A stretch of DNA of 62,998 bases, filler included, from Choristocarpus tenellus KU-1152 (Eukaryota > Protista > Phaeophyceae), in NCBI GenBank assembly GCA_964200185.2. It is 8 parts of 8 records of this genome, joined end to end, with 100 filler letters (N's around TTAATTAATTAA, not from the genome) between each part and the next. Parts side by side here need not be neighbours in the genome. Positions count along the whole stretch, not along the records: positions 33,140 to 46,094 come from CAXNAD020001639.1; 7 more parts are not named here. One strand, 5' to 3'. A program made the translations under genes and the position numbers. The first letter of the stretch is position 1, and each line of letters opens with the position of its first letter. Of this stretch, positions 32,761 through 46,094 are shown in pieces. Below the pieces are notes generated by a model, which saw only the letters and a list, made by a program, of their open reading frames with translations, had not been told where the DNA came from and did not search any database.

Positions 32761-33618
32761 GTAAGATCATTCTTTTTTGCTAGTGTAACTTTTTATTGTT
32801 GTTACATTACTTTTTTTAATTCTGTACATATTTAGTAGTTAGGGTTAGGGTTAGTATTCCTACTCTCTTTTTAGTTTTTTTGTGGTAGAGATGGTGCTGC
32901 AATGTAAGAATTGATTCGAAGGGAATGTATTAGTAGATGAGAGGAGGGCCAGCGCCTCGCTAAATTGTTCCAATGGCAACTGTTTTTGTCGGGGGGGGGG
33001 GGGGGGGGGGGGGGATGGGGAGGGGGGGACTTGTGGTGGNNNNNNNNNNNNNNNNNNNNNNNNNNNNNNNNNNNNNNNNNNNNTTAATTAATTAANNNNN
33101 NNNNNNNNNNNNNNNNNNNNNNNNNNNNNNNNNNNNNNNTGGGCAAAGGGGACGAATGTAGGGAGCTGTGAAGAGGAAGTGGGTGGGGGTGGGGGCAGGG
33201 GGGCATGCAGAACCCTGACTGAGAATCGATTCCATGATTTGTGATGTTGAGGAGATGAGATTGTAACTGACGAGGGGATTGTATCACCGCACCCCTGCAA
33301 TGTGATGCAGTTCATACTTCAAGTCCCAAGGTTTCATACTTTGCAGGTTGGAATGGGGTTTGTACTTACTCTCTGCAATCTCAAAACAATCCCTGTCAAA
33401 GCGCATTGAATGTCACACATGTAGAACCACAATACAGATACAGTACCAAGGTACAGATACAGTACCAAGGTACGTTACAACACCACGGTACAAAAGCAGT
33501 ATCCTCAACCCTTCCAACAGAAAACAACAAAAGATAGATCTCTTGACGAAAACCATGCCTTTCCTGCCCCCCCCCTCCCCCCCCTTCCCACACATGCCAT
33601 ATACAGCTGCACACACAC

Positions 33619-33911
33619 CCAAGGTCCTCCAGTTGCCCTTCCATGCGCTCCGAGTCTGCCACATTCATTTGACATCCCATAGTTTCCATGAAGTACTTGG
33701 GTGCAGGGGCACCTTGGGACTGGAGGGAACGGAGTGCCGGCAGAATCTCTCCTGTACCAGGGTTACGCAACCTCGCCTTCTTCTTGGAGGTGGAGGTCAG
33801 CCGAGTCATGACATCATCAATCTGCTCAAACATGACATCATCAATCATACACAAGCACGTTTGTTTGCGCGTCCGTGAATAAATGCGTACAGACAGAAAC
33901 AAAAGCACAAG

Positions 33912-33945
<34 letters not shown>

Positions 33946-35932
33946 ATTAGTGCATTACAGGGCATGAACAATGTATCAGTGTACTATACAGTTGACACAG
34001 CATGGCAACCTATGTACACACGCACAATAGATAAAGGACACATGGTATGAAGATGAGCAAGATCAAACACAACCACACCAGGAAAAGGAACAACAGGCAT
34101 GGATTGTTGACATGTGCATACAAAAAACGCAAGCAAGATTCACACAAAAGTAAGTGATCATGATCTCAGTTTGAAGGGTTTTTCAAGGATTTGGGGTGGA
34201 CAGGGAGGTTGAGCAAACATTACGGTGGACTTGGCCTTGAGTGGGTTTGTATTTTCAAGGGTGATTGCAGACAATAAACTGATCAAGTGTCAATATATGA
34301 GGGGGAAGGGAGGTCAAGGACACCGCCAACATGAGTATATATGCTGCACTTATATATGCGGAAACCTGAATGAGAAACCCAATGCACTGCAAAAGACACA
34401 CCATCTTGGTACCCTTACACCTCAGCCTTGTTCAAGTAGTCCATGGTAAGAAAAACTGTCAAATGAACTCAAACACCAGAATGAGGGTGTAGAGAGATTG
34501 TCAGTGGAAGACGTGTCTAGGAAATGAATAATAGGGCTTTTGAGCACTGAAGTTGGATGCAACTTTGGGGTTTGTCCTGCATGTGACCACATGTCTCCTC
34601 TCTCTATGCTGATTCTTAACTTGCATAAATCCGGGGGAAAGCTTTTGATAAGGACCCTGTGGATAACTTACACATCATTTCACGTAACGAAGATGGTTCT
34701 CCCAATTTATGAAAATTACTCCCATCCCCCAACCTGCCACTGAAGCCATGTCTCTGTTGGCACTGCTCCAAATGGTAACCACATGTTGTTGTTAGACTGA
34801 CTTACGAAAAATATATCCAACACGAATTTGTAGCACATTCTGTACCACAGCAATATGTGATGCATTCAGATCCAAGGTGCACTTGACTGACAGATACAAA
34901 TCATGTCCGCGAATCTGCATGTGTTACCCCGGGCTTATACCCGCTTTTCAAACCTTGACAAGATGCCAGCCCCTCTCTGTGGGCGCCATCATCACGTCTC
35001 CGGGCTTGAAATCTAGAAGCGCCTCCCTTGCCTTGACTGGAAGAACCTCGTTCACTCCTGCCTCTGCGTCTCCCATAGCCCCGAGTTCCCCTGTGTGATC
35101 GCCCAGCCCCACAACACTAACCCACCCTATCAATCCCCCCTTCTCCCTGGTCAGTACACAGTCGCTGATTGTGGCTGCCAGGTCGCTGAAGTCTGAACCC
35201 GCCTTGATCTGTGCTAGACAAGTCTCCGCCATATCTTTCGTCTGCACAAGGATGTGACGAACGAACCTGAGGGTGCAGCGGATGTTGACGGCAAGGGGGT
35301 TCACAGGTATACCTGATTCAGATGTTCGGCCACTGAATATGTGTTATCGAGATAAAGTGTGAGTTACGCAAGATATTATCTAACCCTTACCAGCTTAGAC
35401 ACCATTTGCGTTACGGTTGGCAATGGTACCATTTACACCTGGCATTATCATTGTATTGGTGGTAAAGACACGGATAGTGCGATAATGTGCACTCCGAGCG
35501 TAGCTACCGAAGATATGAGGGTAAATCCAAATACTCATCAACAAACCAATTCATTATCGACCCCCCAACCCCAGCTTACATGGACTCCACGTTCTTGTAG
35601 TTCACGGTCTCCTGCGCCCTGGTGAGCCATGGTTTGACCTTTTCGGAAGGCATCTTAGCCATCGTGTCCGACATGGTACATGACGGCGTTAGGATTGAAG
35701 ATCGTCCCTGTCCATCCCATCGTCCTCCCACCCGCAATGCTCCAAAATCACAGCCTGCACGATCACAACCTACAACACCTTGTCTCCATGCCACCTCAGG
35801 TGTTAGCGGTGAGTGCATAAAGGCTAATGATCCGTTCATCCAGAGAGAGCCCACCAACACCATCACCGAGGTACGAATTAACCCTCCACCCATGCTTGTC
35901 GTTGGTGAGGACGACGGGGACGGGAGAGCCAT
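33619..35932 (-). CDS. miaB: Organelle-targeted parvulin (PpiC) PPIase fused to a MiaB-family tRNA methylthiotransferase; exons 35580-35932, 34954-35266, 33619-33821; rest beyond the contig end
   Basis: Exon 1 has a hydrophobic segment followed by SLA-F. Exon 2 reads FVRHILV...FSDLAATISDC...KGGLIGWV...PTERGWHLVK. Exon 3 ends in KYFMETMGCQMNVADSERMEGQLEDLG, the MTTase N-terminal (UPF0004) signature. GT-AG introns in phases 2 and 0 keep the frame open. Confidence 0.85.
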
Positions 35933-36689
35933 GTTGTTAGTATGGGGTAACTATTAGCTGCAACCAAACGTGAAGTTGGGCAGCGCCTCTAAAATATCTA
36001 CAAACTCCACCAACGGCAGTTGAGGATATTTTGACATATAACCATAAAGAAACAACAGATCCACTTCCTACTGAATGTTGACTGCAACCTCTACCCTATC
36101 TGGTGGCTCCTTATTCAGTTTCAGCTAACTTAGGGTAGATTCCAAGCGCGCGTTTATTTCCTCTGAACGATTTTACCACTTGCTGCCTTCATCTACCTGC
36201 ATACGGAGAAGCTATCCCGATTGTGGATTCAGCGTGACGATATTGTGGATCATGGTGGTGAGCAGTACATTAATAATGCTCTTGGCTGGTAATAGAGAGA
36301 GAAATTTGAAGAACCTGGACCAAAATCAACCCAAGATGGAAGCCTAGAGTGCGTGACAAACTCTCCATATCCCATGCCTTCCCGCCCACCCACACAACGA
36401 TCAGAGAGCGACAAAACCCAAGCAAGAGAAGGGGGGGAATGTGTCAAAGAAAGGTGATTAGGCCACTTGCTATACCGCAGTGATCCCAACGAGACGATAA
36501 CCTTGGAGGTGCAACTCATTGTTTATCGTACTCAGTACCTTCGTGGTAATTTATCTTCCCTTTGGTGAGCGATTAATTGTGGTAAGTACACTCCTATCGC
36601 GCCACTGGGATATACCTTAGCCTGGCGCCTAAATCTCCTGTCATCTAAAGCACCTCCGACTTTCCAAACGATTGCTCGCAGGCTTAGAC

Positions 36690-39600
36690 ATGACCCTCGG
36701 AGAGATTCGCAAGATACGTCTGGCCAAGGTGGAAAAGGTGTGCAACCACGTACTTTCGGTTGTTGCTGTTAACATCTTGATGTGTAACTTTCCCATAGGA
36801 ATTGATGAATGCCTGAACCATCGATAGAATTGATGGCATCATACATCGCGTTCTTTTTGACTGTTCCTTCAGGTGGTGTGGAGATCCTTCAGAGACATAC
36901 TATACCGTCTAGTGTATGCCCGAGTTTGGATTTTGCCCTGATTCACTTGCTAGTAAAGGGACTCGTATCAACTCCAATGCATTGCATACTCACACTCTAC
37001 CCACCTTAGCAACCGTTTTCGCCCAAAATAGTCCCGATTATTGTGCTGTCTAATGCTACTGTAGTATCTGAATCGTTCCTATCTGTGTTGTTTGTCCATT
37101 GCCCCATTACCCTAACTTTGTCTTTGTTCAATTTTCAAACATGTACGGTCACCAGATCACTGACAAAAACGATCAGCTAGAAAAAGCATTTCTGTATCCT
37201 ACCTATCCCCTTCATTCTTACCACTAAGAAAATCTGTTCCAACCATTCCACTAGCTATTACAGTTGCACTATTTTTTCTTCACATATGATGGAACATATT
37301 CTTTCATTGACTACACAAGTGCAGCAGATCAACTCTATTGGGTCCACCACCTCAACACACCCCACCTACAATTGTTCCCACTTCCCCTCGAAAACAGATC
37401 AGGAGGGAACATGCTCTCAGAGAGCAGGGGATTCTCTACGCAACATTTGAGGCTGTGAAGCAGTCAATGCTACAGAGACTGGTTGAGGACCTTGAGGCGG
37501 AAAAGGCGGAGACAGCAAATAAAGCATCTGCTGGGGGCAAGGGTAAGAGAGTCGCTGTGCAGGGGGAAAAAGACGACATGGTATTCGTGCATCTGAAGGC
37601 AATGGGCGGACCTCACAAGGGGGCTTCCTTCACATTGAAACTGGTAGCCGGGGGAGAGCCTGCTATGCTGGGACGCTCCACGACAAAAAAGGTGACTGGC
37701 CAGTGGAATAGATGGGACAAGTGCTGTCAGTAGAGGCGACACTGCTTGTTGGATATGAGTTTCTTCTCTTGATAAGTTTGGATTAACAAAGAGATGAAGC
37801 TGAAACTCTATCTTCTGGTATTGCTTTTTGCATCAGTTTATCTCAAATAACAGAAAATGCTTCATGGCTCCCACAACTGTGAAGATTGACCTTGACCTCA
37901 TTACCTATGGTCCTCCCCCTTCAGTAAGAGTGTGTGCTGATATCACCAAGAGATTGAAATTCCTAGCTGTTTGCCAACATGGGTTTTGAACTCCGGGGTT
38001 GAAATTTGTACTACTATGGTGGGAGGTACTGATGAAGATTTTTGTTTTATCAGCGGTTTCCAGGTACTTTCATTGTTTCATTTTTTCCGAAATTTAGTTC
38101 AATTGACCAATTGCAATTATCTCGTTCTATATGTGGTACTTACTTCTCACTATGTGATTGGGTGAAAGCTAATGACTTGAGCTTCAAGTCGGAGTAACGC
38201 TTGGTGCCTATCCCAAAATATCCAACTCTGCACCTACATGAAAATTGGGAGTCCCAGAGTCACGCCCTGATAGTTTTCCAACTTTTAGAGGTTGCACAAG
38301 GAAAGAGAGGAAGACCATAGTTGGTTGTTAGAGAGAAGGGGGCTAAATGCAGAAACCTGTCCAGGGCGATTTGTTGAGACTAAAAACCAATCAAGAGTTA
38401 CAGATGCCTCGAGTAAGGAGTCTCTGGATGAGGAATAAGAGAAACAAGAGGTGTCAAGAGGACTGGGCACAAAGGCACTTTGAAACAAGGGGATGCCACA
38501 GAACAAGGGGGGGGAGGAGGCCAACCAAATATGAAGCAAGGGCCCCCGCATGACTGTGACGACGTCATAGTGGGACTTGAATGCCACCAGATATAATGAC
38601 CAAGAGGTTAGGGAAGTTGATGCCAAAGGGCAAGTTGGCTAATAAGAGGTGCTTTCCAAGGAGTAGGCACGTGTACTGCTGATGCTGTACTATCAGTTTC
38701 TTGCCTTCAACCATATGGGCCAAACTGAGGCGGTGGAGGGTGTCTGTCTAGCATCAGGAGTGAGATACAACACCTCCTTCTACTTTGTAAAAACTTGGGA
38801 AGGGGAACAGGAGAGATATTTTGCACACCTCTGGGGCTGGAAGAGGCACTGTTAATGTAGAATCCACAAAAGGAGGCACAGACTCCTTAAATCAGACTTA
38901 TACGAGATAGAACTAACCCTCCATCCTTACACAGCAGTGATGAGAAAATTTGGTCTTCTGTAGGGATTTGGTGACTTGTGTTAAGACAGAGTCTGGGGTG
39001 GGACTCTCATTGAGGGTTGTGGGTACTGTCCTGTAGCACTGGGATATGATTTGGACACCAACCCCTATATGCCCAAGTTTCAGCCCATATATTTGTTTTG
39101 GCAGCATGGGAAGCAGTGCGTCAGCATTTTGGTATATGCAAAGGGGAGAGCGATTGCCCAAGTGAAAGATCGGATAAGGCTATGGTTGTACGGTGACCCT
39201 AACCCTAACTGGAATCAGATTGAGAGTGGATGGAAGCCGGCAGGCTTTGGCAAGCTGGTTGCAGGTGCTCAGGGGGAGTAGACAATATACGTCAAGATAG
39301 GGGACAAGAATCTGGAGGGAGACATATGAAACCTCACAAGTATTCTGGACGTGCTGAAAGATTCAACAGTGTTGCCTAAAAAAGTACTGGAGGACGTAGA
39401 GGGGGGAGATCAGCAGATTTTGCAGGAGGATCGTGAGGTGCAGCTCAAGGTGGAAGATGATAAGTAACAATGAAAACGTCGACACTAAAGAGTCTGAGAC
39501 TGTAATTTTTACATTGAGTATCAAAAGACAACCCAGCAACTCTGGAGCGCTCGTAGCGCGCGCTCCAGAGTAGTTCGACAATTTTTTCTTTCCCTTAAAA

Positions 39601-42233
39601 TGTTCTTTGCAGTCAGCCAATCAAAACGACTTGATCCGCTTAAAACGTGTCCTATGAGTCCTGTGCACGTCAGAATTTCAATTGCGTGAGTTTCACACCA
39701 TGAAGAGGCAAGACAATCGTTTGAAGCTGAAAAAAGTAACAAAACTATTACCCCCAAGAAACGGAACTACTTCACCCCCTACACATAATGCCCGCCCTAT
39801 TGCTCGCTGTGTTTTTTTTAATTGAAGGAGCTACGTAGCTTGATCAGTGAGCGCACTAGAACGTAAGCTTTTGCTCCATATGTATTTCATTTCACAAGGG
39901 ATGAAACCTGTAGCAGGTTTTAAACGATGGTTTAAAAACTCCTCCAGTCTACTTTGTGGGTTTTAAGTATTTTCTCCAAATCTGGCCAAAAATCGGAAGG
40001 AATCTTGGGTTCCACCGCGGAGTTAGGAATTCACACCAACTGCATTAGATCCTGCTGCCCACCATGTTTCCGATCATCTTGCGTCTGTTGTCTAACTCGA
40101 AATATTCCTGAAATTATATATTTTTAAAATCTTGATTACTACTTCCCTCCAGAAATAGTGCAGGCGTTTCTTACGGGTTTGGACTGAGGCCATGCATACT
40201 CAACATTTTTATTATGAAGGTATTCTTTTGTGAAGGAATTTTCTCCATTCTCACAGAATGTTCTCCGAATTCAAAACTCGCGAATGACCGACAACAAAAA
40301 AGAAGTCAAAAATGGATCGGTCTGCTGTGTGACCTTGCCCTGTGCTGATGATAGACTAGGCGTGCAGCCATGCCGGCATATACTAGATGACAATACCGAT
40401 CTTGGTCAATGTCTGCATCAAATGTACAGTATGGTCTCAATTTCCTTCATTGAGCTGTTCCCTTCAGGCGCAATGTTCTTGGCGTGCACATGTAAGTCAG
40501 GGTGGAGGAGAGACAAGCAGAGGACACTTTTTTTTTTTAGTTTTGAAATTCAGGACTGAGAAAATGTTGCTGTTTATTTTTAAGAATCCCTCCCCCCTCG
40601 CACAATTACATAAAATAAAGGAGATGATAATAGCCTCGCTCCATGAGCTCAAGGTATGTGCAAGAGATTTCCTGTTGAAATCAAAATGCTCAGCCTGGTA
40701 ATCACACTAACCCTAACCCTGTGAGTAGTCCAGTTGGACAGTCAATAACATTAGTGCTGCAGTAGCATTGGGCAGATATATCTCAACCTTGGACATCCCT
40801 TGCAGCGACCAAAGCAGCGCACTCATTAAAAGAAATCTCTACAATTCAAACCCTAACCCTGCCATCCAGTGTTTATCCAAACTTTGTTTTTGGAAGTCCA
40901 GGAGTATTTCCTTCTTTGGAAAAAAATATATATACACAAATATATATTTTAGATTTCCTGGCAGAAGACACTCCCGTCCTGTGATGGACATAGCCTTTTC
41001 CACCTCCCCTCTGAACCCCATCACTATGTAGTAAAAGTACGAAAATATATACATATTTCTAACACGCCTCTCCTCTCTTTCTCATCAACCCCCTAGTTCA
41101 AGGAGAAGGGTGTGAGTCTTCCACGAGACAAAGAGGTGTCGACTTCTCACGGCAAACTGTACAGGGTGGGAGCAGGCGTGGCCTTTGTTGATGTGGGGAG
41201 CAGCAACGGTACGGTCGTGGACGGGTGAGTGGGAGGGAAGGAAATACGGCGGCAGGATAGATGGGTGGGGCTAGGCTTCCTCAGAGTCAAGCACCCTCAT
41301 GTGCTCCCTGCTCTAATTGGATATTTGCAGTACTTGTCCTTTTAAAAAAAAAAATGGGTACTTTGCCCCAGGGTCCCCTATCGAGGGAGATATTGCACTC
41401 AACATTTTCTTATTGAATTCTTGCCTGCTTATGATGGGAGGGAAAAGATGGTAGGATTGCTCAGAGCGCTCTGGAGCTGCAAAAAAAAAGTATAGAGTTC
41501 TGACACACCCGACTGCGTACCGTAGATGCTACGTACACCCTCATTCATCTGCGTGTGATTAAGTTTGGAGCTCGCTAAATAAGTCCGAACCTCGAGATGT
41601 GTTTTAAGGTTGCTTGCTAATATATTTGTCAACTTTTTTCTCATGTAGATGAGAGGTGTCAGGGGGAGGAAATACTAGTGTCCATCAAATGTTGAGTTAC
41701 CACGGTACCGGTGCAATAAGCAGTTACATGTAACTGCTTACTGCCCTGGTGGTACAAAGTTTGATCGAATCTGAGGCCGGAGTGCTACCAGCTTAATCCA
41801 CGGGCCATCGCCCCACTAGTGATGTACCCTCCCTGAGCAGTCACCTCAATCTTTGCACTTCCCATTGCGCCTGATGCCTTAACCCCCCCCCCCCTCAGTC
41901 TATCTTTATCCTCACGTTGTAAGCAAGTCCAGCCAGAATTCAAACCCACAGCCTCTGGTTTGTATTACTTTCTCCACTGGGGGTGCAGTGGTAACTCAAT
42001 ATTTGACATGCATAGAATGTAGTGAAGATGTGAACAAGACCTGATGATACCTTGTTCCTCTCTCTTCTTGTCTCTTATCTTGATGATTGCTCTTGCTACA
42101 TATCTCCGGATGGATACTTTGGGGGGGGGTGCTTCTTTGCAGGGAGGAAGCAGTCAAGGGGAAGATTTTTGAGGTCAAGACGGGCATGGAGATACTCATT
42201 GGCCAAACTCCATTGTTACTCGAAGTTGAGTAG
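36690..42233 (+). CDS. Small FHA-domain protein; exons ~36690-36737, 37399-37691, 41097-41224, 42141-42233 (5' end uncertain)
   Basis: [10 protein letters not shown]...MLGRS|...DKEVSTSHG...[14 protein letters not shown]|...[11 protein letters not shown] contains the conserved FHA G-R, S-x-x-H and S-x-NGT motifs. An N-terminal helical segment precedes it. Confidence 0.85.
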
Positions 42234-45200
42234 ATGTAAGTGCCGATCTTGATGTTTTTTAGAGTGATAATGGTGGCAGTATGTAGAAGCAGTTACTCGC
42301 TGGGAGTTTCTAAGCGGTGCTTTACTTAACCTTCCCACCAGCAAAGGAAGGAGAGTAAGACCAAAGTGCTGGCTCATCAAGGGGCTGGACCGGAACACTG
42401 ATTATCATGTTCAATTGATATGCAACATGGGGGCTAGGTGTCTAGCATAGTGGTGCATCTTAGTGCTGCAGTGGTTAGTAGTGGTGTTCATTGCCTGAGA
42501 GTGGATTCTACTTTCTTCTAATGAGTGTTTTTTCAGGTGACTGTTTCTGTGTTCGTTGTGTACTTGATTTGATGTCCTGAGGATAATTAACACAACCTAC
42601 AGAAAGGAGTGTTGAATGGGGATGTATTCCATCGGCTTGGCTTGGCCACAAGTACCAACACTGTTGTGTGTCTCAATGTCTTGACTTGTGTTTGTGTGTT
42701 GTGAAGGGGCTGTACAGGATTGGAGGGGAAGATGGTTGGGGAATTTACACTGAGAGATAGCTAATGTTGAGACCTTGTCTTAGTGATTTGGTGGGTTCAC
42801 TATTGTTATGTAGGGCCAAGGCTCTCATGAATGGTGACTGTGGTTATTGTCACTAGAGGGGAAGGTGCAATATATGTGTGTGTGTGGATTCCTCACATCA
42901 ATTGTTTTTCTCTAAGCTACTTGCTGGACTGCTTGGAGCTCTCTGTGAGCTGTTAAGAAGTGAAAATGCATGATATTGGAGTATTTCTGGGAATATGTTA
43001 TTCTCACAACGAGCAGATTGGGGGAAACTAATATGTGAAAATTGTCAAGTCCTAGCACACGGTATGATATGTGTGGTGTGTGGTGCCTTGAGAGTTAAGC
43101 CTTCGTGTTACAAGCAGATAAGAATAGAACTAACCTAAGTTTGAGGAAAGCATAGCCTTGTGCTTGCAGTTCATACCATTATTATTCCTCAAGAAAGATG
43201 GCGAAGTTAATGAGTCATAGCTTTGTCTCGGTCATTCATCACCTTTCTCGCTGTCGAATCACCTATGTAAAGTATGTGCATATATACATAAAGTACATCT
43301 ACATCTAGTCTGGAGTGTGTACGTAGATCAACATTTACAACATCACCCATTTTTAGTGTTGTGAATGGCGATGATTCGATCAAGTTGATCTAACTGTCTG
43401 ATAGAAGAATTATCACGGTTGGAATCCAAAGCTTTCGACTGATGCGATGCTTTTAATCACAATCGTCCACACTGCACGATTTGCTTCCTTCCTGACAAAA
43501 GAACGGAGGAAGTCCGAGTTTGATGGCAGTCATCTCATTATGGGGGGGTTCAGTTCAAGCGAATTGATGGAATCGTTTCGAGTTGATTAATAAGCAGCAC
43601 CCATGGGATTATTTCGATTCACGATATTGGGAAGTCCATGCCTGTTTTCTACTATATATAATAGTAGATGGGATGATTGAAAAAAACTATACTTTGCATT
43701 CGATTTGACTGGAATTGTTGTCTTCATCAGTAAACTAAAATCGATCAAGTTGGAGTGGCATCAGAACTATCTGTACCAAAAGAAATGTTCTTGGCCGTTC
43801 CACATTGGGGCATGATGGATTCTGGTCAACAGGGGGAAGGAGGTGTGACAACCAGGGTGTTCAACATGTGAACGTTTTGTGTGGCAAGGATGAGTTCACT
43901 CATCATTCCTACGTATTGGGTATGATGACTCCACTCTGTATATACCCGATTAAGTTATGCAGCGCTGAAATGAGTCAATTGGTATGATGGCAACCACTAC
44001 GACCACACACAAAGATCATCCAAGTTTAGGATGGATAGAGTGCTGCGGTTTGTCGAGCACATCGTATTGGCTAAAGAATTACTTCATTCGAGGGTCATCG
44101 CAAGTATTTCGTGACTGATTCAGTACAGCTCTGCTGACAGAGCAAGAAGTATCATTTGCTTTCAGGGACTTGAACACTGAGCAAGGTCAGGGGATCTATT
44201 CCTCTGCCTTCACAGTTAGTCGTGGTCTTGTGGTCAAGGAGTGACAACATTGCATGCGCCTTGTGCATTGTGTGCTCTGAATGTTGTTGCTCAAGTGGAG
44301 TACCAGAAAACTCGACTTCAAACAGCAAACAGCTACTGCGGTACCTGAGATAGCCAATCCGTCTTCGTGACTCAGCGGCTAGAGGAAGCTGTTCCCTACA
44401 TGACTTCTGTTATTCCTCCAACCCGATCAACATCAGGCTTCTCTTCATGGGAATCTGGCTTTGATTATTCAAAGCCCGTACGACGTGGCAAGCACTGCAG
44501 AGTGTGCATCTGTACTATCCCTACCTGTCATCTTACCACAAAAACGCAAAACCGAGAATGAGGTGGCAAGACTTCATTGCGGGAACGAGGCAGGTCCATC
44601 ATACTATTCAACAGAGGAGATGGAGCGATGAGCAGTGGGTTGATTGAGCCCAACATGAGAGGAGAAAGGCACGATAGGGGGCACTACAATTATAAGTCAT
44701 AATACATTTAGTTTCTGTAATCAGTCTTGAGAAGAAATGCGACATGTAGAGACTCAGACCCAGGGTTGGGATAGTTCCCCAGACCGAATTAAAGAAGATA
44801 ACCATCTTGCACCGGCTCTCACCAATTCAACACTAGCGCATATGCAATACATCGTTTTAGTTCCTACCGCATATTTGCCCTGACATATCTCCTTGTCGTC
44901 TCGCCTCTTGTGTGTCCTTAGAGTTTTCTTCACTGAATGTTCTTTACCTCTGTTGGTGTACTGACTGTATAATTAGATATTGAAAGTGAACTTTTTTTTG
45001 CACAGTTGTACCCCCTGGAATGCCCACGCTGTAAGGCAGGCGTTTGTTGGAGAAAGTCACAACAGAGAGTTGCAAAGGGCTGAGGAAGAGCACTGTTTGA
45101 CACTCCGCACTACAGGTACAAGAGACAGAAATGGTATCTTTACATTTTCACTATAAGGTATACCTTAGTTGGATGATGCCTCTGACAAAATATGCAAATT

Positions 45201-45290
45201 CAATATTTCTCAACTCGCAGTCGCCTACCCCAACAAATCGGTCCTTGTGAGGTTTAAGGACCTTAACAAAAAACAAAAGTAAAACAATTG

Positions 45291-45403
45291 TACTATTGTA
45301 ACCTAGAAGGATTTATATATTTCTTATTATACTATTGTAACCTAGAAGGATTTATATATTTCTTATCATACTATTGTAACCTAGAAGGATTTATATATTT
45401 CTT
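45291..45403. repeat. Minisatellite, 3 x 39 bp (tactattgtaacctagaaggatttatatatttcttatta)
   Basis: Near-perfect tandem copies. Confidence 0.9.
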
Positions 45404-45614
45404 TCTGGACCAGATCGTTCTTTCCATCATGGAACGTCAGCGATTATTATCATTTTTCTCAGAAGAACAGGGACACATAGGTCAGTGTCATAGACATGTC
45501 ACGTCACACGGTGACGTACCCACATTATCCCCAAACTCAATGAGGACCCTTTTTTCTCAAGGACTTATGAGGTAGAAGTTGAGGGTATTGAATTAACTAC
45601 TACTGTGGTTCCAA

Positions 45615-46094
45615 ATGGCTCACCATCCTATGAACACGGAGGATATGATATTCCCAGCATCAGGAGAGGAATGGTTTGATTTCGCTACGGACGATGCAGC
45701 CCTTTCAAGAGGGGATTCAATGCAGGTGTCCACAATGACTATGTTGTAGGTTGAGATGAACGTTCGAGTTGATGGCTTTGGGTTATGTAACGGATGTCAG
45801 ATGAGGTATTTTCTTTTGCCTCATATCATATCAGGGTTACTCGATGCATATTTCTGGAGTGTTGTTTATCTTCTCATTACACATACCAAACACTGCGCCC
45901 TACACATAGGGGATTGGGGATGAAGATACAGACGAGGATTTCGATGACGAGGAAGAAGAGACCGCTTTGGTTGACAGGGGATTTCCTGGGCTGGAGGAAC
46001 CGGAGGGTGTGACTGGAGCTAGGGGGGGGGAAGCAGAGGGGGGCCGGCGGCAAGAGCTGGTGCCCCAGCCTAAAATGGAATTGGAATTGATGAA
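45615..46094 (+). CDS. Hypothetical protein N-terminus (acidic), exons 45615-45725 and 45910-46094, truncated
   Basis: MAHHPMNTEDMIFP...DSMQ|GIGDEDTDEDFDDEEEE is joined by an in-phase GT-AG intron. No recognisable domain. Confidence 0.4.

What the first reader, a model, noticed from the sequence alone, without database searches (positions are those of the whole stretch)
33619..35932. Plastid-targeted parvulin PPIase-MiaB fusion: a prolyl isomerase tethered to a tRNA methylthiotransferase
Seen: three exons with GT-AG junctions splice in frame. They give a presequence (hydrophobic stretch + SLA-F), then a full parvulin domain (RHIL, SDC, GGLIGW, GWHLVK|IDD), a basic linker (SKKKARLR) and the MTTase N-terminal motif METMGCQMNVADSERM. 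Known: bacterial MiaB and mitochondrial CDK5RAP1 consist of UPF0004 + radical SAM + TRAM domains, make ms2i6A37, and do not carry a PpiC domain. Plant plastids have a PpiC-rhodanese fusion (STR12), another pairing of a parvulin with sulfur chemistry. Inference: the parvulin may chaperone folding or Fe-S loading after import, or couple tRNA methylthiolation to a partner. Both histidines and the Pin1-like Cys are retained, but there is an approximately 20-aa insertion and altered pocket residues, so it could be a binding module rather than an enzyme.
Basis: partly seen in the sequence, partly recalled or inferred. Interest (0 to 1): 0.8.

Follow-up and report, generated by a model that had tools for sequence, protein, structure and literature searches.

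The report
Plastid MiaB carrying a parvulin domain
This is a real, expressed algal gene for a plastid-targeted tRNA methylthiotransferase (MiaB) with a prolyl-isomerase-like domain fused to its front; the same fusion is already in public databases for haptophytes, diatoms, brown algae and chromerids, but I found no paper that has studied it.

Summary
It then runs 152 nt further into MiaB-like sequence. Exon 2 is a PpiC-type parvulin domain and exon 3 ends in the first 25 positions of the MiaB N-terminal domain.

The fusion is not new as an architecture. More than 100 public proteins of about 600-800 aa carry Rotamase + UPF0004 + Radical_SAM + TRAM. They come from brown algae (the closest to this window), diatoms, bolidophytes, Nannochloropsis, Chrysoparadoxa, haptophytes and chromerids. 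Databases name them MiaB or "Peptidylprolyl isomerase". No paper in the held library links a methylthiotransferase to a parvulin.

The MiaB part of a brown-algal orthologue is 57-64% identical to cyanobacterial MiaB, which has no parvulin gene nearby. 76 of 98 family N-termini show a signal peptide followed by a small residue and an aromatic one, the motif of complex-plastid import.

The parvulin keeps the His/Cys/Ser-Thr/His tetrad, but its proline pocket is changed. A complex prediction with controls supports docking onto the radical-SAM core (score 0.75, best control 0.00).

Verdict: an ordinary orthologue of a catalogued but unstudied fusion family.

The parts
35580..35932 (-). Exon 1. It holds the presequence and the conserved segment before the parvulin domain (..KVKPWLTRAQETVNYKNVES). 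The start codon is either 35932 or, more likely, the in-frame ATG at 35893.
   Evidence: The X3 spliced contig covers 35578-35923. Its last 19 residues are 79% identical to Pylaiella P0266 residues 88-106.
35819..35893 (-). Predicted signal peptide MGGGLIRTSVMVLVGSLWMNGSLA followed by Phe. This is the small-residue|aromatic motif of bipartite presequences for complex plastids.
   Evidence: Read from the sequence. In the family, 80 of 98 N-termini have a hydrophobic 12-mer and 76 of those have [ASGC][FWY] just after it.
35267..35579 (-). Intron 1 (313 nt, GT..AG).
   Evidence: Joint in the X3 contig, with the +2 shift that fits equally well.
34954..35266 (-). Exon 2: the PpiC-type parvulin domain (FVRHILV ... 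GWHLVK). Tetrad residues are H4, C36, T96 and H101 of the exon translation.
   Evidence: Pfam Rotamase_3 1.7e-8 and Rotamase 4e-7. AlphaFold model with pLDDT 83.6. Foldseek matches PrsA and SurA parvulin domains at TM 0.66-0.74.
35062..35112 (-). Lineage-variable insertion in the parvulin domain (about residues 52-68, VGLGDHTGELGAMGDAE) between the GW strand and the next helix.
   Evidence: Residues 55-65 have pLDDT below 50. The insertion is absent from Chrysoparadoxa, Vitrella and Chromera and about 45-55 aa long in Pylaiella and Scytosiphon.
33822..34953 (-). Intron 2 (1132 nt, GT..AG). It contains the in-frame TGA at 34948-34950 and a (CT)n(GT)n microsatellite at 33888-33953.
   Evidence: Joint 33821/34954 in the X3 contig at depth 860. 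Intron depth in X3 is 0-6.
33619..33821 (-). Exon 3. It holds the conserved IDDVM tail of the parvulin module, the basic linker (SKKKARLR) and the start of the MiaB N-terminal domain.
   Evidence: Covered by the X3 contig. It is 67-70% identical to the brown-algal proteins P0271, P0269 and P0266.
33621..33698 (-). Start of the MTTase N-terminal (UPF0004) domain, KYFMETMGCQMNVADSERMEGQLEDL, including the first Cys ligand of the auxiliary [4Fe-4S] cluster.
   Evidence: Pfam UPF0004 profile positions 1-25. NCBIfam MiaB TIGR01574 positions 1-24. This Cys is invariant in 96 fusions.
33140..33618 (-). Intron 3, partial. The next exon lies beyond the edge of the piece.
   Evidence: The X3 contig runs on for 152 nt that are not found in the piece. 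The 30 letters shown read MVRSEDKSDA in frame, matching brown-algal G-I-K/D-R-T-E-D.

Best explanation
This is the 5' part of a nuclear gene, from an ochrophyte alga related to brown algae, for the plastid tRNA (i6A37-C2)-methylthiotransferase MiaB.

The protein is built as: signal peptide + transit peptide, a parvulin-type domain, a basic linker, then a cyanobacterium-derived MiaB (UPF0004 + radical SAM + TRAM).

Shown: the three exons are spliced in frame in an abundant transcript. The same architecture is conserved in haptophytes, ochrophytes and chromerids.

Inferred from family membership: the MiaB part makes ms2i6A37 on plastid tRNAs.

Inferred from a controlled model and from conservation: the parvulin domain is a docked accessory domain, not a loosely tethered foldase. 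Its family-invariant KPGD loop, the end of helix 1, its N-terminal lead-in and the DVM tail pack against two MiaB segments. One is the link between the UPF0004 domain and the radical-SAM core. The other is the RGxEQSRP segment right after the CxxxCxxC cluster loop. None of the His/Cys/Ser-Thr/His tetrad residues is among the confidently contacting residues.

The most likely role is a cis-acting stabilising or maturation module for this oxygen-sensitive two-cluster enzyme after import. It may also bind a proline-containing partner. Whether it still catalyses prolyl isomerisation is open.

The confidence given (0.75) is for the identity of the gene, the fusion and the plastid MiaB reading taken together; the docking step alone I put at about 0.55.
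For: Splicing and expression:
- a spliced contig at depth 860, no joints in the DNA-like runs X1 and X2, and continuation into MiaB-like sequence.

Domains:
-.

Conserved architecture:
- phmmer of exon 2 against 1.84 billion representatives.
- at least 24 of the best 150 carry ETMGCQMNxADSER downstream of the parvulin.
- four-domain Pfam architecture in P0075 and P0121.
- named members in Chromera, Vitrella, diatoms, Triparma, Pylaiella, Scytosiphon, Cladosiphon, Nemacystus, Chrysoparadoxa, Nannochloropsis, Prymnesium and Chrysochromulina.

MiaB identity:
- orthologues score 437-466 bits on the MiaB equivalog TIGR01574 (cut-off 355.3). They stay below the MtaB and RimO cut-offs.
- all six cluster cysteines are invariant.

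Cyanobacterial origin:
- all 80 best prokaryotic loci look cyanobacterial (most record titles; a few MAG titles name other bacteria; one is Vampirovibrio at 45%); identity of the rest is 56-65% over nearly the whole queried MiaB part.
- no parvulin within 3 kb of miaB in those loci.

Plastid targeting:
-.

Parvulin constraint:
- H19, C51, G59, G62, K139, P140, G141, D142, G151, H153 and D159 are invariant in 96 fusions.

Docking:
- ipSAE 0.75 (median of 0.75, 0.83, 0.00); best of 3 controls 0.00.
- The mark was reached by 58 of 80 solved complexes and 2 of 110 mismatched pairs. On eukaryotes it was reached by 39 of 65 and 2 of 126.
- The partner's pLDDT is at least 55. The runs agree in at least 0% of their contacts. 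My own alignments were used, so the counts hold only roughly.
- The interface uses the non-catalytic invariant residues.
- residues conserved in fusions but not in cyanobacteria are mildly enriched at the modelled MiaB interface (9 of 27 against 70 of 415; one-sided Fisher p = 0.035).
Against: - Only about 25 residues of the MiaB domain are in the piece. The radical-SAM and TRAM exons of this genome were not seen.
- The library type of X3 is not on record. It is called RNA-like only from its depth pattern and its joints.
- One of the three complex runs scored 0.00. The score is the model's own confidence, not a measurement. It was obtained with the Scytosiphon orthologue P0271, not with this window's protein.
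- The interface enrichment is weak, and the fusions form one clade, so the counts are not independent.
- The proline pocket is remodelled. Mapped by hand from the HMMER alignment to SurA, with PpiC numbering recalled from memory, E. coli PpiC F61 corresponds to Ala and F81 to Arg. F81A abolishes PpiC activity in PMC7353009. This argues against a classical PPIase. The invariant tetrad argues for some retained chemistry or a structural need.
- Cyanobacteria do without the domain, so it cannot be generally required for MiaB.
Confidence: 0.75

Rival explanations
1. The fusion is real, but the two halves work independently. The parvulin domain is an active stromal PPIase or foldase acting on other imported proteins, and it is joined to MiaB only by a historical accident of gene fusion.
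For: The His/Cys/Ser-Thr/His tetrad is invariant or nearly so in 96 sequences. The fold and nearest structures are those of foldase parvulins, PrsA and SurA P2. The linker is basic, of variable length and poorly conserved. One of the three complex runs gave no interface.
Against: The non-catalytic motifs KPGD and DVM are invariant, and they are exactly the residues placed at the MiaB interface in two of three runs, with controls at 0.00. The proline-pocket residues are replaced, F61 by Ala and F81 by Arg (F81A is inactive in PMC7353009). The fusion has been kept without fission across haptophytes, ochrophytes and chromerids.
Confidence: 0.2
2. The parvulin-like domain is a catalytically dead structural or regulatory cap, like SurA P1 or the PpiD parvulin domain. 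It sits by the radical-SAM cluster loop and gates reductant or oxygen access, or recruits a partner such as ferredoxin or an Fe-S carrier.
For: The modelled interface lies next to N157 and R169-P176, which flank the CxxxCxxC loop. The pocket is remodelled. The PpiD and SurA P1 domains are among the matches. I know these as parvulin domains without PPIase activity from memory; that was not tested here.
Against: No data on partners. The tetrad would not need to stay invariant in a pure scaffold. Cyanobacterial MiaB works without any such cap.
Confidence: 0.2
3. There are two separate genes. The parvulin gene ends at the TGA at 34948-34950 and an independent MiaB gene starts in or before exon 3. 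The joined contig would then be a read-through or an assembly chimera.
For: Reading through the donor gives GWHLVKV*, a natural-looking parvulin C-terminus. An ORF with a hydrophobic start, made from the microsatellite, runs from 33971 into exon 3.
Against: The spliced form has depth 860 against 0-6 for the intron in the same run, with canonical GT..AG at both joints. In more than 100 homologues the sequence across this junction is continuous (HLVQV-DVM). D159 and V160 of the DVM tail, encoded here by exon 3, are invariant or nearly so.
Confidence: 0.02

Closest known systems
Algal parvulin-MiaB proteins already in public databases: Pylaiella littoralis P0266 (719 aa), Scytosiphon promiscuus P0271, Cladosiphon okamuranus EP00903_P014407, Nannochloropsis gaditana 'adenosine tRNA methylthiotransferase' P0321, Prymnesium parvum P0308, Chromera velia Cvel_6562 / A0A0G4HEZ9, Vitrella brassicaformis P0264, and many diatoms
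   Same: They share the order presequence - parvulin - linker - UPF0004 - Radical_SAM - TRAM. Exon 3 is 67-70% and exon 2 about 48% identical to the brown-algal members. The invariant residues and the position of the insertion are the same.
   Different: The window's insertion is shorter than in the Ectocarpales. Identity is too low for it to be one of the named species. Only the first three exons are in the piece.
Cyanobacterial MiaB (for example Trichodesmium erythraeum IMS101 and Gloeomargarita)
   Same: The MiaB part of the brown-algal orthologue is 57-64% identical over nearly its whole length. All cluster cysteines and the TRAM domain are present.
   Different: There is no parvulin domain and no parvulin gene within 3 kb. 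The protein starts right at the ..TxGCQMN motif. About 79 positions are conserved in fusions but not in cyanobacteria.
Bacterial foldase parvulins: B. subtilis PrsA (1zk6, 4wo7), E. coli SurA P2 and P1 (1m5y), PpiC/Par10 (1jns), PpiD (2kgj)
   Same: Parvulin fold at TM 0.66-0.74. Best profile matches at 2e-14 to 5e-6. Short beta1-alpha1 loop without the Pin1 phosphate-binding basic loop. His..Cys..Ser/Thr..His tetrad.
   Different: The pocket residues equivalent to Par10 F61 and F81 are Ala and Arg (mapped by hand, numbering from memory). There is an insertion after the GW strand. The motifs KPGD and DVM are family-specific. The domain is fused to a radical-SAM enzyme rather than to chaperone domains.
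Plant STR12 / AtPIN3-type parvulin-rhodanese fusion (from memory), and the 2x parvulin + rhodanese protein P0041 found here
   Same: A parvulin domain fused to a sulfur-handling domain in a photosynthetic eukaryote.
   Different: The partner domain is a rhodanese, not a radical-SAM MTTase. No orthology was shown. The link to sulfur chemistry is only an analogy.
Mitochondrial CDK5RAP1 and bacterial MiaB (Bacteroides uniformis, 7mjv)
   Same: The same enzyme family and the same expected reaction, i6A37 to ms2i6A37. 7mjv matches the UPF0004 start of the family profile.
   Different: They carry no parvulin domain. The algal fusion derives from the cyanobacterial (plastid) lineage, not the mitochondrial one.

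Membership tests
MiaB (tRNA i6A37 C2-methylthiotransferase, MTTase family) | N-terminal UPF0004/MTTase domain with three Cys ligands for the auxiliary [4Fe-4S] cluster | tested here: inconclusive
   The window holds only profile positions 1-25 with the first Cys (GCQMN). Pfam gives 27.0 bits, exactly the cut-off. NCBIfam MiaB positions 1-24 score 23.4 bits. The transcript contig continues in frame. In 96 orthologues all three Cys are invariant.
MiaB (tRNA i6A37 C2-methylthiotransferase, MTTase family) | Radical-SAM core with CxxxCxxC, and a C-terminal TRAM domain | not testable with these tools
   These exons lie beyond the edge of the piece. Orthologues P0266, P0271, P0121 and P0075 have both. 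C156, C160 and C163 are invariant.
MiaB (tRNA i6A37 C2-methylthiotransferase, MTTase family) | MiaB subfamily rather than RimO or MtaB/CDKAL1 | tested here: met
   Tested on orthologues, not on the window. TIGR01574 scores 437-466 bits against a cut-off of 355.3. MtaB TIGR01579 scores 299-314 against 357. RimO TIGR01125 scores 289-295 against 357.
MiaB (tRNA i6A37 C2-methylthiotransferase, MTTase family) | Enzymatic formation of ms2i6A37 | not testable with these tools
   This needs tRNA nucleoside LC-MS in a knockout or a complemented strain.
Parvulin (PpiC-type PPIase) family | Parvulin fold (four-stranded sheet with four helices) | tested here: met
   Pfam Rotamase_3 at 35.4 bits (cut-off 22.5) and Rotamase at 31.3 bits (cut-off 21.7). 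Model pLDDT 83.6. Foldseek probability 1.00 to PrsA, SurA, Par14, Pin1 and Par10.
Parvulin (PpiC-type PPIase) family | Catalytic hydrogen-bond tetrad His / Cys(or Asp) / Ser-Thr / His | tested here: met
   The window has H4, C36, T96 and H101 of exon 2. In 96 fusions H19, C51 and H153 are invariant and S148 is at least 90% conserved.
Parvulin (PpiC-type PPIase) family | Hydrophobic proline pocket (Par10 M57, F61, F81; Pin1 L122, M130, F134) | tested here: not met
   By the HMMER alignment to SurA and PrsA, with the mapping to Par10 done by hand and numbering from memory: M57 corresponds to Leu, F61 to Ala (LPxxAR) and F81 to Arg (RGxH). F81A abolishes PpiC activity (PMC7353009). Fold membership stands; classical PPIase activity is doubtful.
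Parvulin (PpiC-type PPIase) family | Measured prolyl cis/trans isomerase activity | not testable with these tools
   This needs a protease-coupled or NMR exchange assay.
Pin1-type (phospho-specific) parvulins | Basic phosphate-binding loop between beta1 and alpha1 (Pin1 K63, R68, R69) | tested here: not met
   The loop is short (RHILVQTKDMAE), as in Par10 and PrsA. Pin1 matches cover only the central part at E about 3e-4.
Nuclear-encoded proteins of complex red-type plastids (bipartite presequence) | N-terminal signal peptide followed by a cleavage-site motif with an aromatic residue at +1 (ASAFAP type) | tested here: met
   By inspection only, since no SignalP, ASAFind or HECTAR was available. 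The window reads ..VMVLVGSLWMNGSLA|F. 76 of 98 family N-termini show the same pattern.

The most novel reading that the evidence does not exclude
The parvulin-like domain is an integral, docked subunit that plastid MiaB needs in algae with red-derived complex plastids. It sits beside the radical-SAM cluster loop and helps maturation, protection or re-loading of the Fe-S clusters. Its invariant Pin1-like cysteine may act as a redox or sulfur relay. That would be the first parvulin domain with a role in a radical-SAM or Fe-S enzyme. The fusion would also be a rare shared character linking the plastid proteomes of haptophytes, ochrophytes and chromerids.
Probability: 0.15. Interest if true: 0.7.

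Novelty: new member of a known kind. Interest (0 to 1): 0.4.

Why it matters
For this window the result is plain annotation: an orthologue of a plastid MiaB that public databases already hold for many algae.

The family is more interesting than this one instance. A parvulin domain has stayed fused to a cyanobacterium-derived radical-SAM tRNA-modifying enzyme across haptophytes, ochrophytes and chromerids. Its invariant non-catalytic motifs are predicted to form a fixed interface beside the cluster loop. No paper in the held library discusses this.

If the domain proves necessary for MiaB function, it would show a new job for parvulins. It would also show a lineage-specific solution for keeping an oxygen-sensitive two-cluster enzyme working inside an oxygenic, four-membrane plastid.

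The fusion might also serve as a rare genomic character for the history of red-derived plastids. That needs its presence or absence in red algae, cryptophytes, dinoflagellates and apicomplexans, which I could not establish.

Tried and rejected
- The word-index search with the parvulin region of P0003 found only 3 proteins. It is too insensitive for this diverged domain.
- Literature searches: parvulin+MiaB gave one E. coli PPIase paper, and its single MiaB mention was not among the passages shown. PPIC-type/radical SAM/diatom, methylthiotransferase with PpiC, rotamase, parvulin or UPF0004, and the P. falciparum apicoplast MiaB paper gave nothing on the fusion.
- Neither loose end of the transcript contig occurs in the piece. 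The next exon and the origin of the 30 foreign 5' letters remain unknown.
- A shared operon origin is rejected: no parvulin within 3 kb of miaB in 80 cyanobacterial loci.
- The tree of the MiaB parts (quick method, 44 rows chosen by me from named taxa plus unnamed clades and 12 cyanobacteria) left the backbone between haptophyte, ochrophyte and chromerid sequences unresolved. No statement on donor or order of events is made.
- The ESM Atlas look-up only returned two diatom-rich MiaB clusters.
- Pfam found nothing in four larger ORFs elsewhere in the piece, at 36672-36824, 37338-37730, 40230-40556 and 45288-45572.
- The two-gene reading (stop at 34948) was considered and rejected and on homology.
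- The three exons were never joined into one typed or built protein.
Full report
WHAT IS THERE

The gene is on the minus strand of the piece (33140-46094). I read 33140-36500 and listed ORFs.
- Exon 1 runs from 35932 to 35580 and ends ..TCC AT|gtaagc.
- Exon 2 runs from 35266 to 34954. It follows ..ccctcag| and reads FVRHILV...GWHLVK|gtttga.
- Exon 3 runs from 33821 to 33619. It follows ..tttgagcag| and reads IDDVMTRL...METMGCQMNVADSERMEGQLEDLG|gtgtgt.

Pfam places exon 2 in the PpiC-type rotamase families: Rotamase_3 at 35.4 bits and Rotamase at 31.3 bits, both above their cut-offs. The last 25 residues of exon 3 match positions 1-25 of UPF0004, the MTTase N-terminal domain, at 27.0 bits, exactly the cut-off. 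Exon 1 matches nothing.

IS IT SPLICED AS CLAIMED?

Yes. Three public runs of one study and one organism hold this stretch.

Laid on 33140-36600, runs X1 and X2 cover exons and introns evenly and show no joints, so they behave as genomic DNA. Run X3 behaves differently. It holds one 1043-nt contig at depth 860 that lies on 33618-33821, 34954-35264 and 35578-35923. The skips are 1132 and 313 bases, both CT..AC on the + strand, which is GT..AG for the gene. The second joint fits equally well shifted by 2. Intron sequence in X3 has depth 0-6. The library type of X3 is not on record. I call it RNA-like from this pattern alone.

The contig runs 152 nt past 33618. The 30 letters shown read ..LG MVRSEDKSDA in frame. 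That matches the brown-algal continuation G-I-(K/D)-R-T-E-D. These letters are not in the piece, so the next exon lies beyond its edge.

That test is not met.

THE 5' END

There it carries exactly 30 other letters, and these are absent from the piece. No AG precedes 35923 in the genome, so a spliced 5' exon is unlikely. Thirty is one less than the 31-letter words on which the run index is built, which I take to be Logan's assembly word as well. That length is what one expects when a contig runs into a sequence shared by many transcripts, such as an adaptor. This is my inference and it remains unexplained.

If transcription starts near 35923, the first ATG is the in-frame one at 35893. That gives MGGGLIRTSVMVLVGSLWMNGSLA|FMHSP.., a compact signal peptide.

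THE FUSION IS A CONSERVED, PUBLIC FAMILY

A phmmer search of exon 2 against 1.84 billion cluster representatives gave 301 hits. Among the best 150, at least 24 carry ETMGCQMNxADSER downstream of the parvulin match.

Pfam shows the full architecture Rotamase + UPF0004 + Radical_SAM + TRAM in P0075 (683 aa) and P0121 (710 aa). Truncated versions of it appear in six more. P0121 is Chromera velia Cvel_6562, UniRef A0A0G4HEZ9.

A profile of 12 fusions returned 120 eukaryotic proteins of 529-825 aa as best hits. All have the MiaB domains and most have a precomputed rotamase hit. A search with P0277 added more. Named members are:
- Diatoms: Seminavis, Nitzschia, Cylindrotheca, Cyclotella, Thalassiosira, Skeletonema, Pseudo-nitzschia, Epithemia, Mayamaea, Mediolabrus.
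- Bolidophytes: Triparma.
- Brown algae: Pylaiella, Scytosiphon, Cladosiphon, Nemacystus.
- Chrysoparadoxa.
- Eustigmatophyte: Nannochloropsis gaditana.
- Haptophytes: Prymnesium parvum, Chrysochromulina.
- Chromerids: Chromera, Vitrella.

Source names are either MiaB-type or, in UniRef, "Peptidylprolyl isomerase". The architecture is therefore catalogued and automatically annotated.

The window is closest to brown algae. Exon 3 is 67-70% identical and exon 2 about 48% identical to them, and they share the insertion.

In all homologues the sequence is continuous across both of this gene's exon junctions. This confirms the splice model independently of the reads.

The three exons were never joined. 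Every search, alignment and fold used each exon by reference.

LITERATURE

No paper in the held library combines methylthiotransferase or MiaB with parvulin, PpiC or rotamase in this sense. The study of P. falciparum apicoplast MiaB does not mention such a domain.

ORIGIN AND IDENTITY OF THE MiaB PART

The MiaB part of the Pylaiella orthologue was searched against one genome per prokaryotic species. All 80 best loci look cyanobacterial: most record titles say so, a few MAG titles name other bacteria, and one locus is Vampirovibrio at 45%. Identity of the rest is 56-65% over nearly the whole queried MiaB part. The search patterns bias which loci are found, but not that level of identity.

None of these loci has a parvulin-like sequence within 3 kb. 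The domain was therefore added in eukaryotes.

Orthologues pass NCBI's MiaB equivalog model at 437-466 bits against a cut-off of 355.3. They fail the MtaB and RimO cut-offs.

In 96 fusions the three N-terminal-domain cysteines and the CxxxCxxC cysteines are invariant. The enzyme is expected to make ms2i6A37. This follows from family membership and is not shown.

TARGETING

Of 98 N-terminally complete family members, 80 have a hydrophobic 12-mer in the first 40 residues. Of these, 76 have a small residue followed by F, W or Y shortly after. This is the ASAFAP-type mark of import into complex red-type plastids, which I know from established work on diatoms.

The window's ..NGSLA|F fits. Together with the cyanobacterial ancestry, this supports a plastid location. 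No dedicated predictor was available.

THE PARVULIN DOMAIN

The AlphaFold model of exon 2 with 53 homologues has mean pLDDT 83.6. Residues 55-65, the insertion, are disordered. Foldseek finds PrsA, SurA P2, BB0108, Par14, Pin1, PpiD and Par10 at TM 0.6-0.74. The family profile hits SurA, PrsA, PpiC, PpiD, Par14 and Pin1 by sequence.

In 96 fusions the invariant residues are the first His (RHIL), the Cys equivalent to Pin1 C113, G..GW, KPGD, G.H and the Asp of the following DVM. The Ser/Thr five residues before the second His is at least 90% conserved. The catalytic-type tetrad is therefore kept.

The proline pocket is not kept. I mapped it by hand from the HMMER alignment to SurA P2, with Par10 numbering from memory. 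The residues equivalent to E. coli PpiC M57, F61 and F81 are Leu, Ala and Arg. F81A abolishes PpiC activity and M57A weakens substrate binding (PMC7353009).

The Pin1 phosphate-binding loop is absent.

The insertion after the GW strand is lineage-variable. It is absent from Chrysoparadoxa and the chromerids, about 17 aa here, and about 45-55 aa in the Ectocarpales.

DOES THE DOMAIN DOCK ON MiaB?

I tested this with the Scytosiphon orthologue, which is N-terminally short and so has no presequence. Parvulin residues 1-173 were folded against MiaB residues 193-634, each with a 96-row alignment in the same order.

Result:
- Score (ipSAE) 0.75, the median of 0.75, 0.83 and 0.00. The best of 3 controls scored 0.00.
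- The mark was reached by 58 of 80 solved complexes and 2 of 110 mismatched pairs. On eukaryotes it was reached by 39 of 65 and 2 of 126.
- The partner's pLDDT is at least 55, and the runs agree in at least 0% of their contacts.
- My own alignments were used, so the calibration holds only roughly.
- The model supports binding. It does not show it.

On the parvulin side the confident interface is the N-terminal lead-in (1-12), the end of helix 1 (32-38), the KPGD loop (138-144) and the DVM tail (157-164). These are the family-invariant residues that have no role in parvulin catalysis.

On the MiaB side the interface is YANR..D..D (111-118), the link ..ATExxHIMED (127-135), N157 next to the first radical-SAM cysteine, RGVEQSRP (170-176), and 208-217. 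The tetrad residues are not among the confident contacts.

As an independent check I aligned 78 cyanobacterial MiaB sequences with the 96 fusions. Positions conserved in fusions (at least 80%) whose residue is below 60% in cyanobacteria make up 9 of 27 interface positions against 70 of 415 others. The odds ratio is 2.5 and the one-sided Fisher p is 0.035. This is weak, and it is not phylogenetically independent.

MECHANISM, WITH ODDS

The gene model and the fusion are near certain. A plastid MiaB is very likely (about 0.85).

I put about 0.55 on the parvulin being a docked accessory domain and not a free foldase. I put about 0.35-0.4 on it still isomerising prolyl bonds.

The most likely role is a cis-acting stabilising or maturation module beside the cluster loop of an oxygen-sensitive enzyme that must be imported unfolded across four membranes. 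The rivals are an independent trans-acting foldase and a dead structural or regulatory cap. The two-gene reading is rejected.

EVOLUTION

A quick maximum-likelihood tree of 32 fusion MiaB parts and 12 cyanobacterial ones puts brown algae with Chrysoparadoxa, and diatoms with one Triparma paralogue. I chose the rows. The backbone between haptophytes, ochrophytes and chromerids is unresolved. No claim about donor or order is made.

Presence in red algae, cryptophytes, dinoflagellates, apicomplexans and green plants was not established. The Tribonema minus model (503 aa) lacks the domain, but it may be truncated.

VERDICT

The window holds an ordinary orthologue of a catalogued family. That family itself is unstudied and has a testable, moderately interesting structural prediction.

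Noticed in passing
window 36205-36256, 36404-36454, about 36681 onward (+ strand): A divergently transcribed neighbour gene. X3 contigs show a GT..AG joint 36256->36404 at depth 140, and a second donor at 36454 whose loose end matches the ORF at about 36681 (LDMTLGEIR). Its 5' end lies only about 280 bp from the parvulin-MiaB gene's 5' end, so the two probably share a promoter region. Pfam finds no family.
   Followed up: partly
window 35923 (5' end of the transcript contig): The X3 contig leaves the genome here with exactly 30 foreign letters (+ strand CCGACTCGAATACCGACACTCCACACAGCT). They are absent from the piece, and no AG acceptor precedes the site. The length is one less than the 31-letter index word, which suggests a sequence shared by many transcripts (adaptor or leader).
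   Followed up: partly
window 33831-33846 and 33807-33822 (minus-strand sense): A 16-nt direct repeat, GATTGATGATGTCATG, occurs twice 24 nt apart and straddles the intron-2 acceptor. The intronic copy would also encode IDDVM. It may be a small tandem duplication at the exon start.
   Followed up: no
window 33888-33953; 33433-33492; 45287-45403: A (CT)n(GT)n microsatellite in intron 2, where the X1 and X2 contigs break. A 19-bp x 3.2 tandem repeat in intron 3 and a 39-bp x 3 tandem repeat near the far end of the piece.
   Followed up: no
P0041 (353 aa), a relative of the parvulin exon: A protein with two parvulin domains followed by a rhodanese domain. Its organism is unknown.
   Followed up: no
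Triparma proteins P0259, P0267 and P0164 in the tree: Bolidophytes appear to have two paralogue groups. One sits with diatoms. The other sits on a long branch near brown algae, and in P0164 Pfam no longer detects a parvulin.
   Followed up: no
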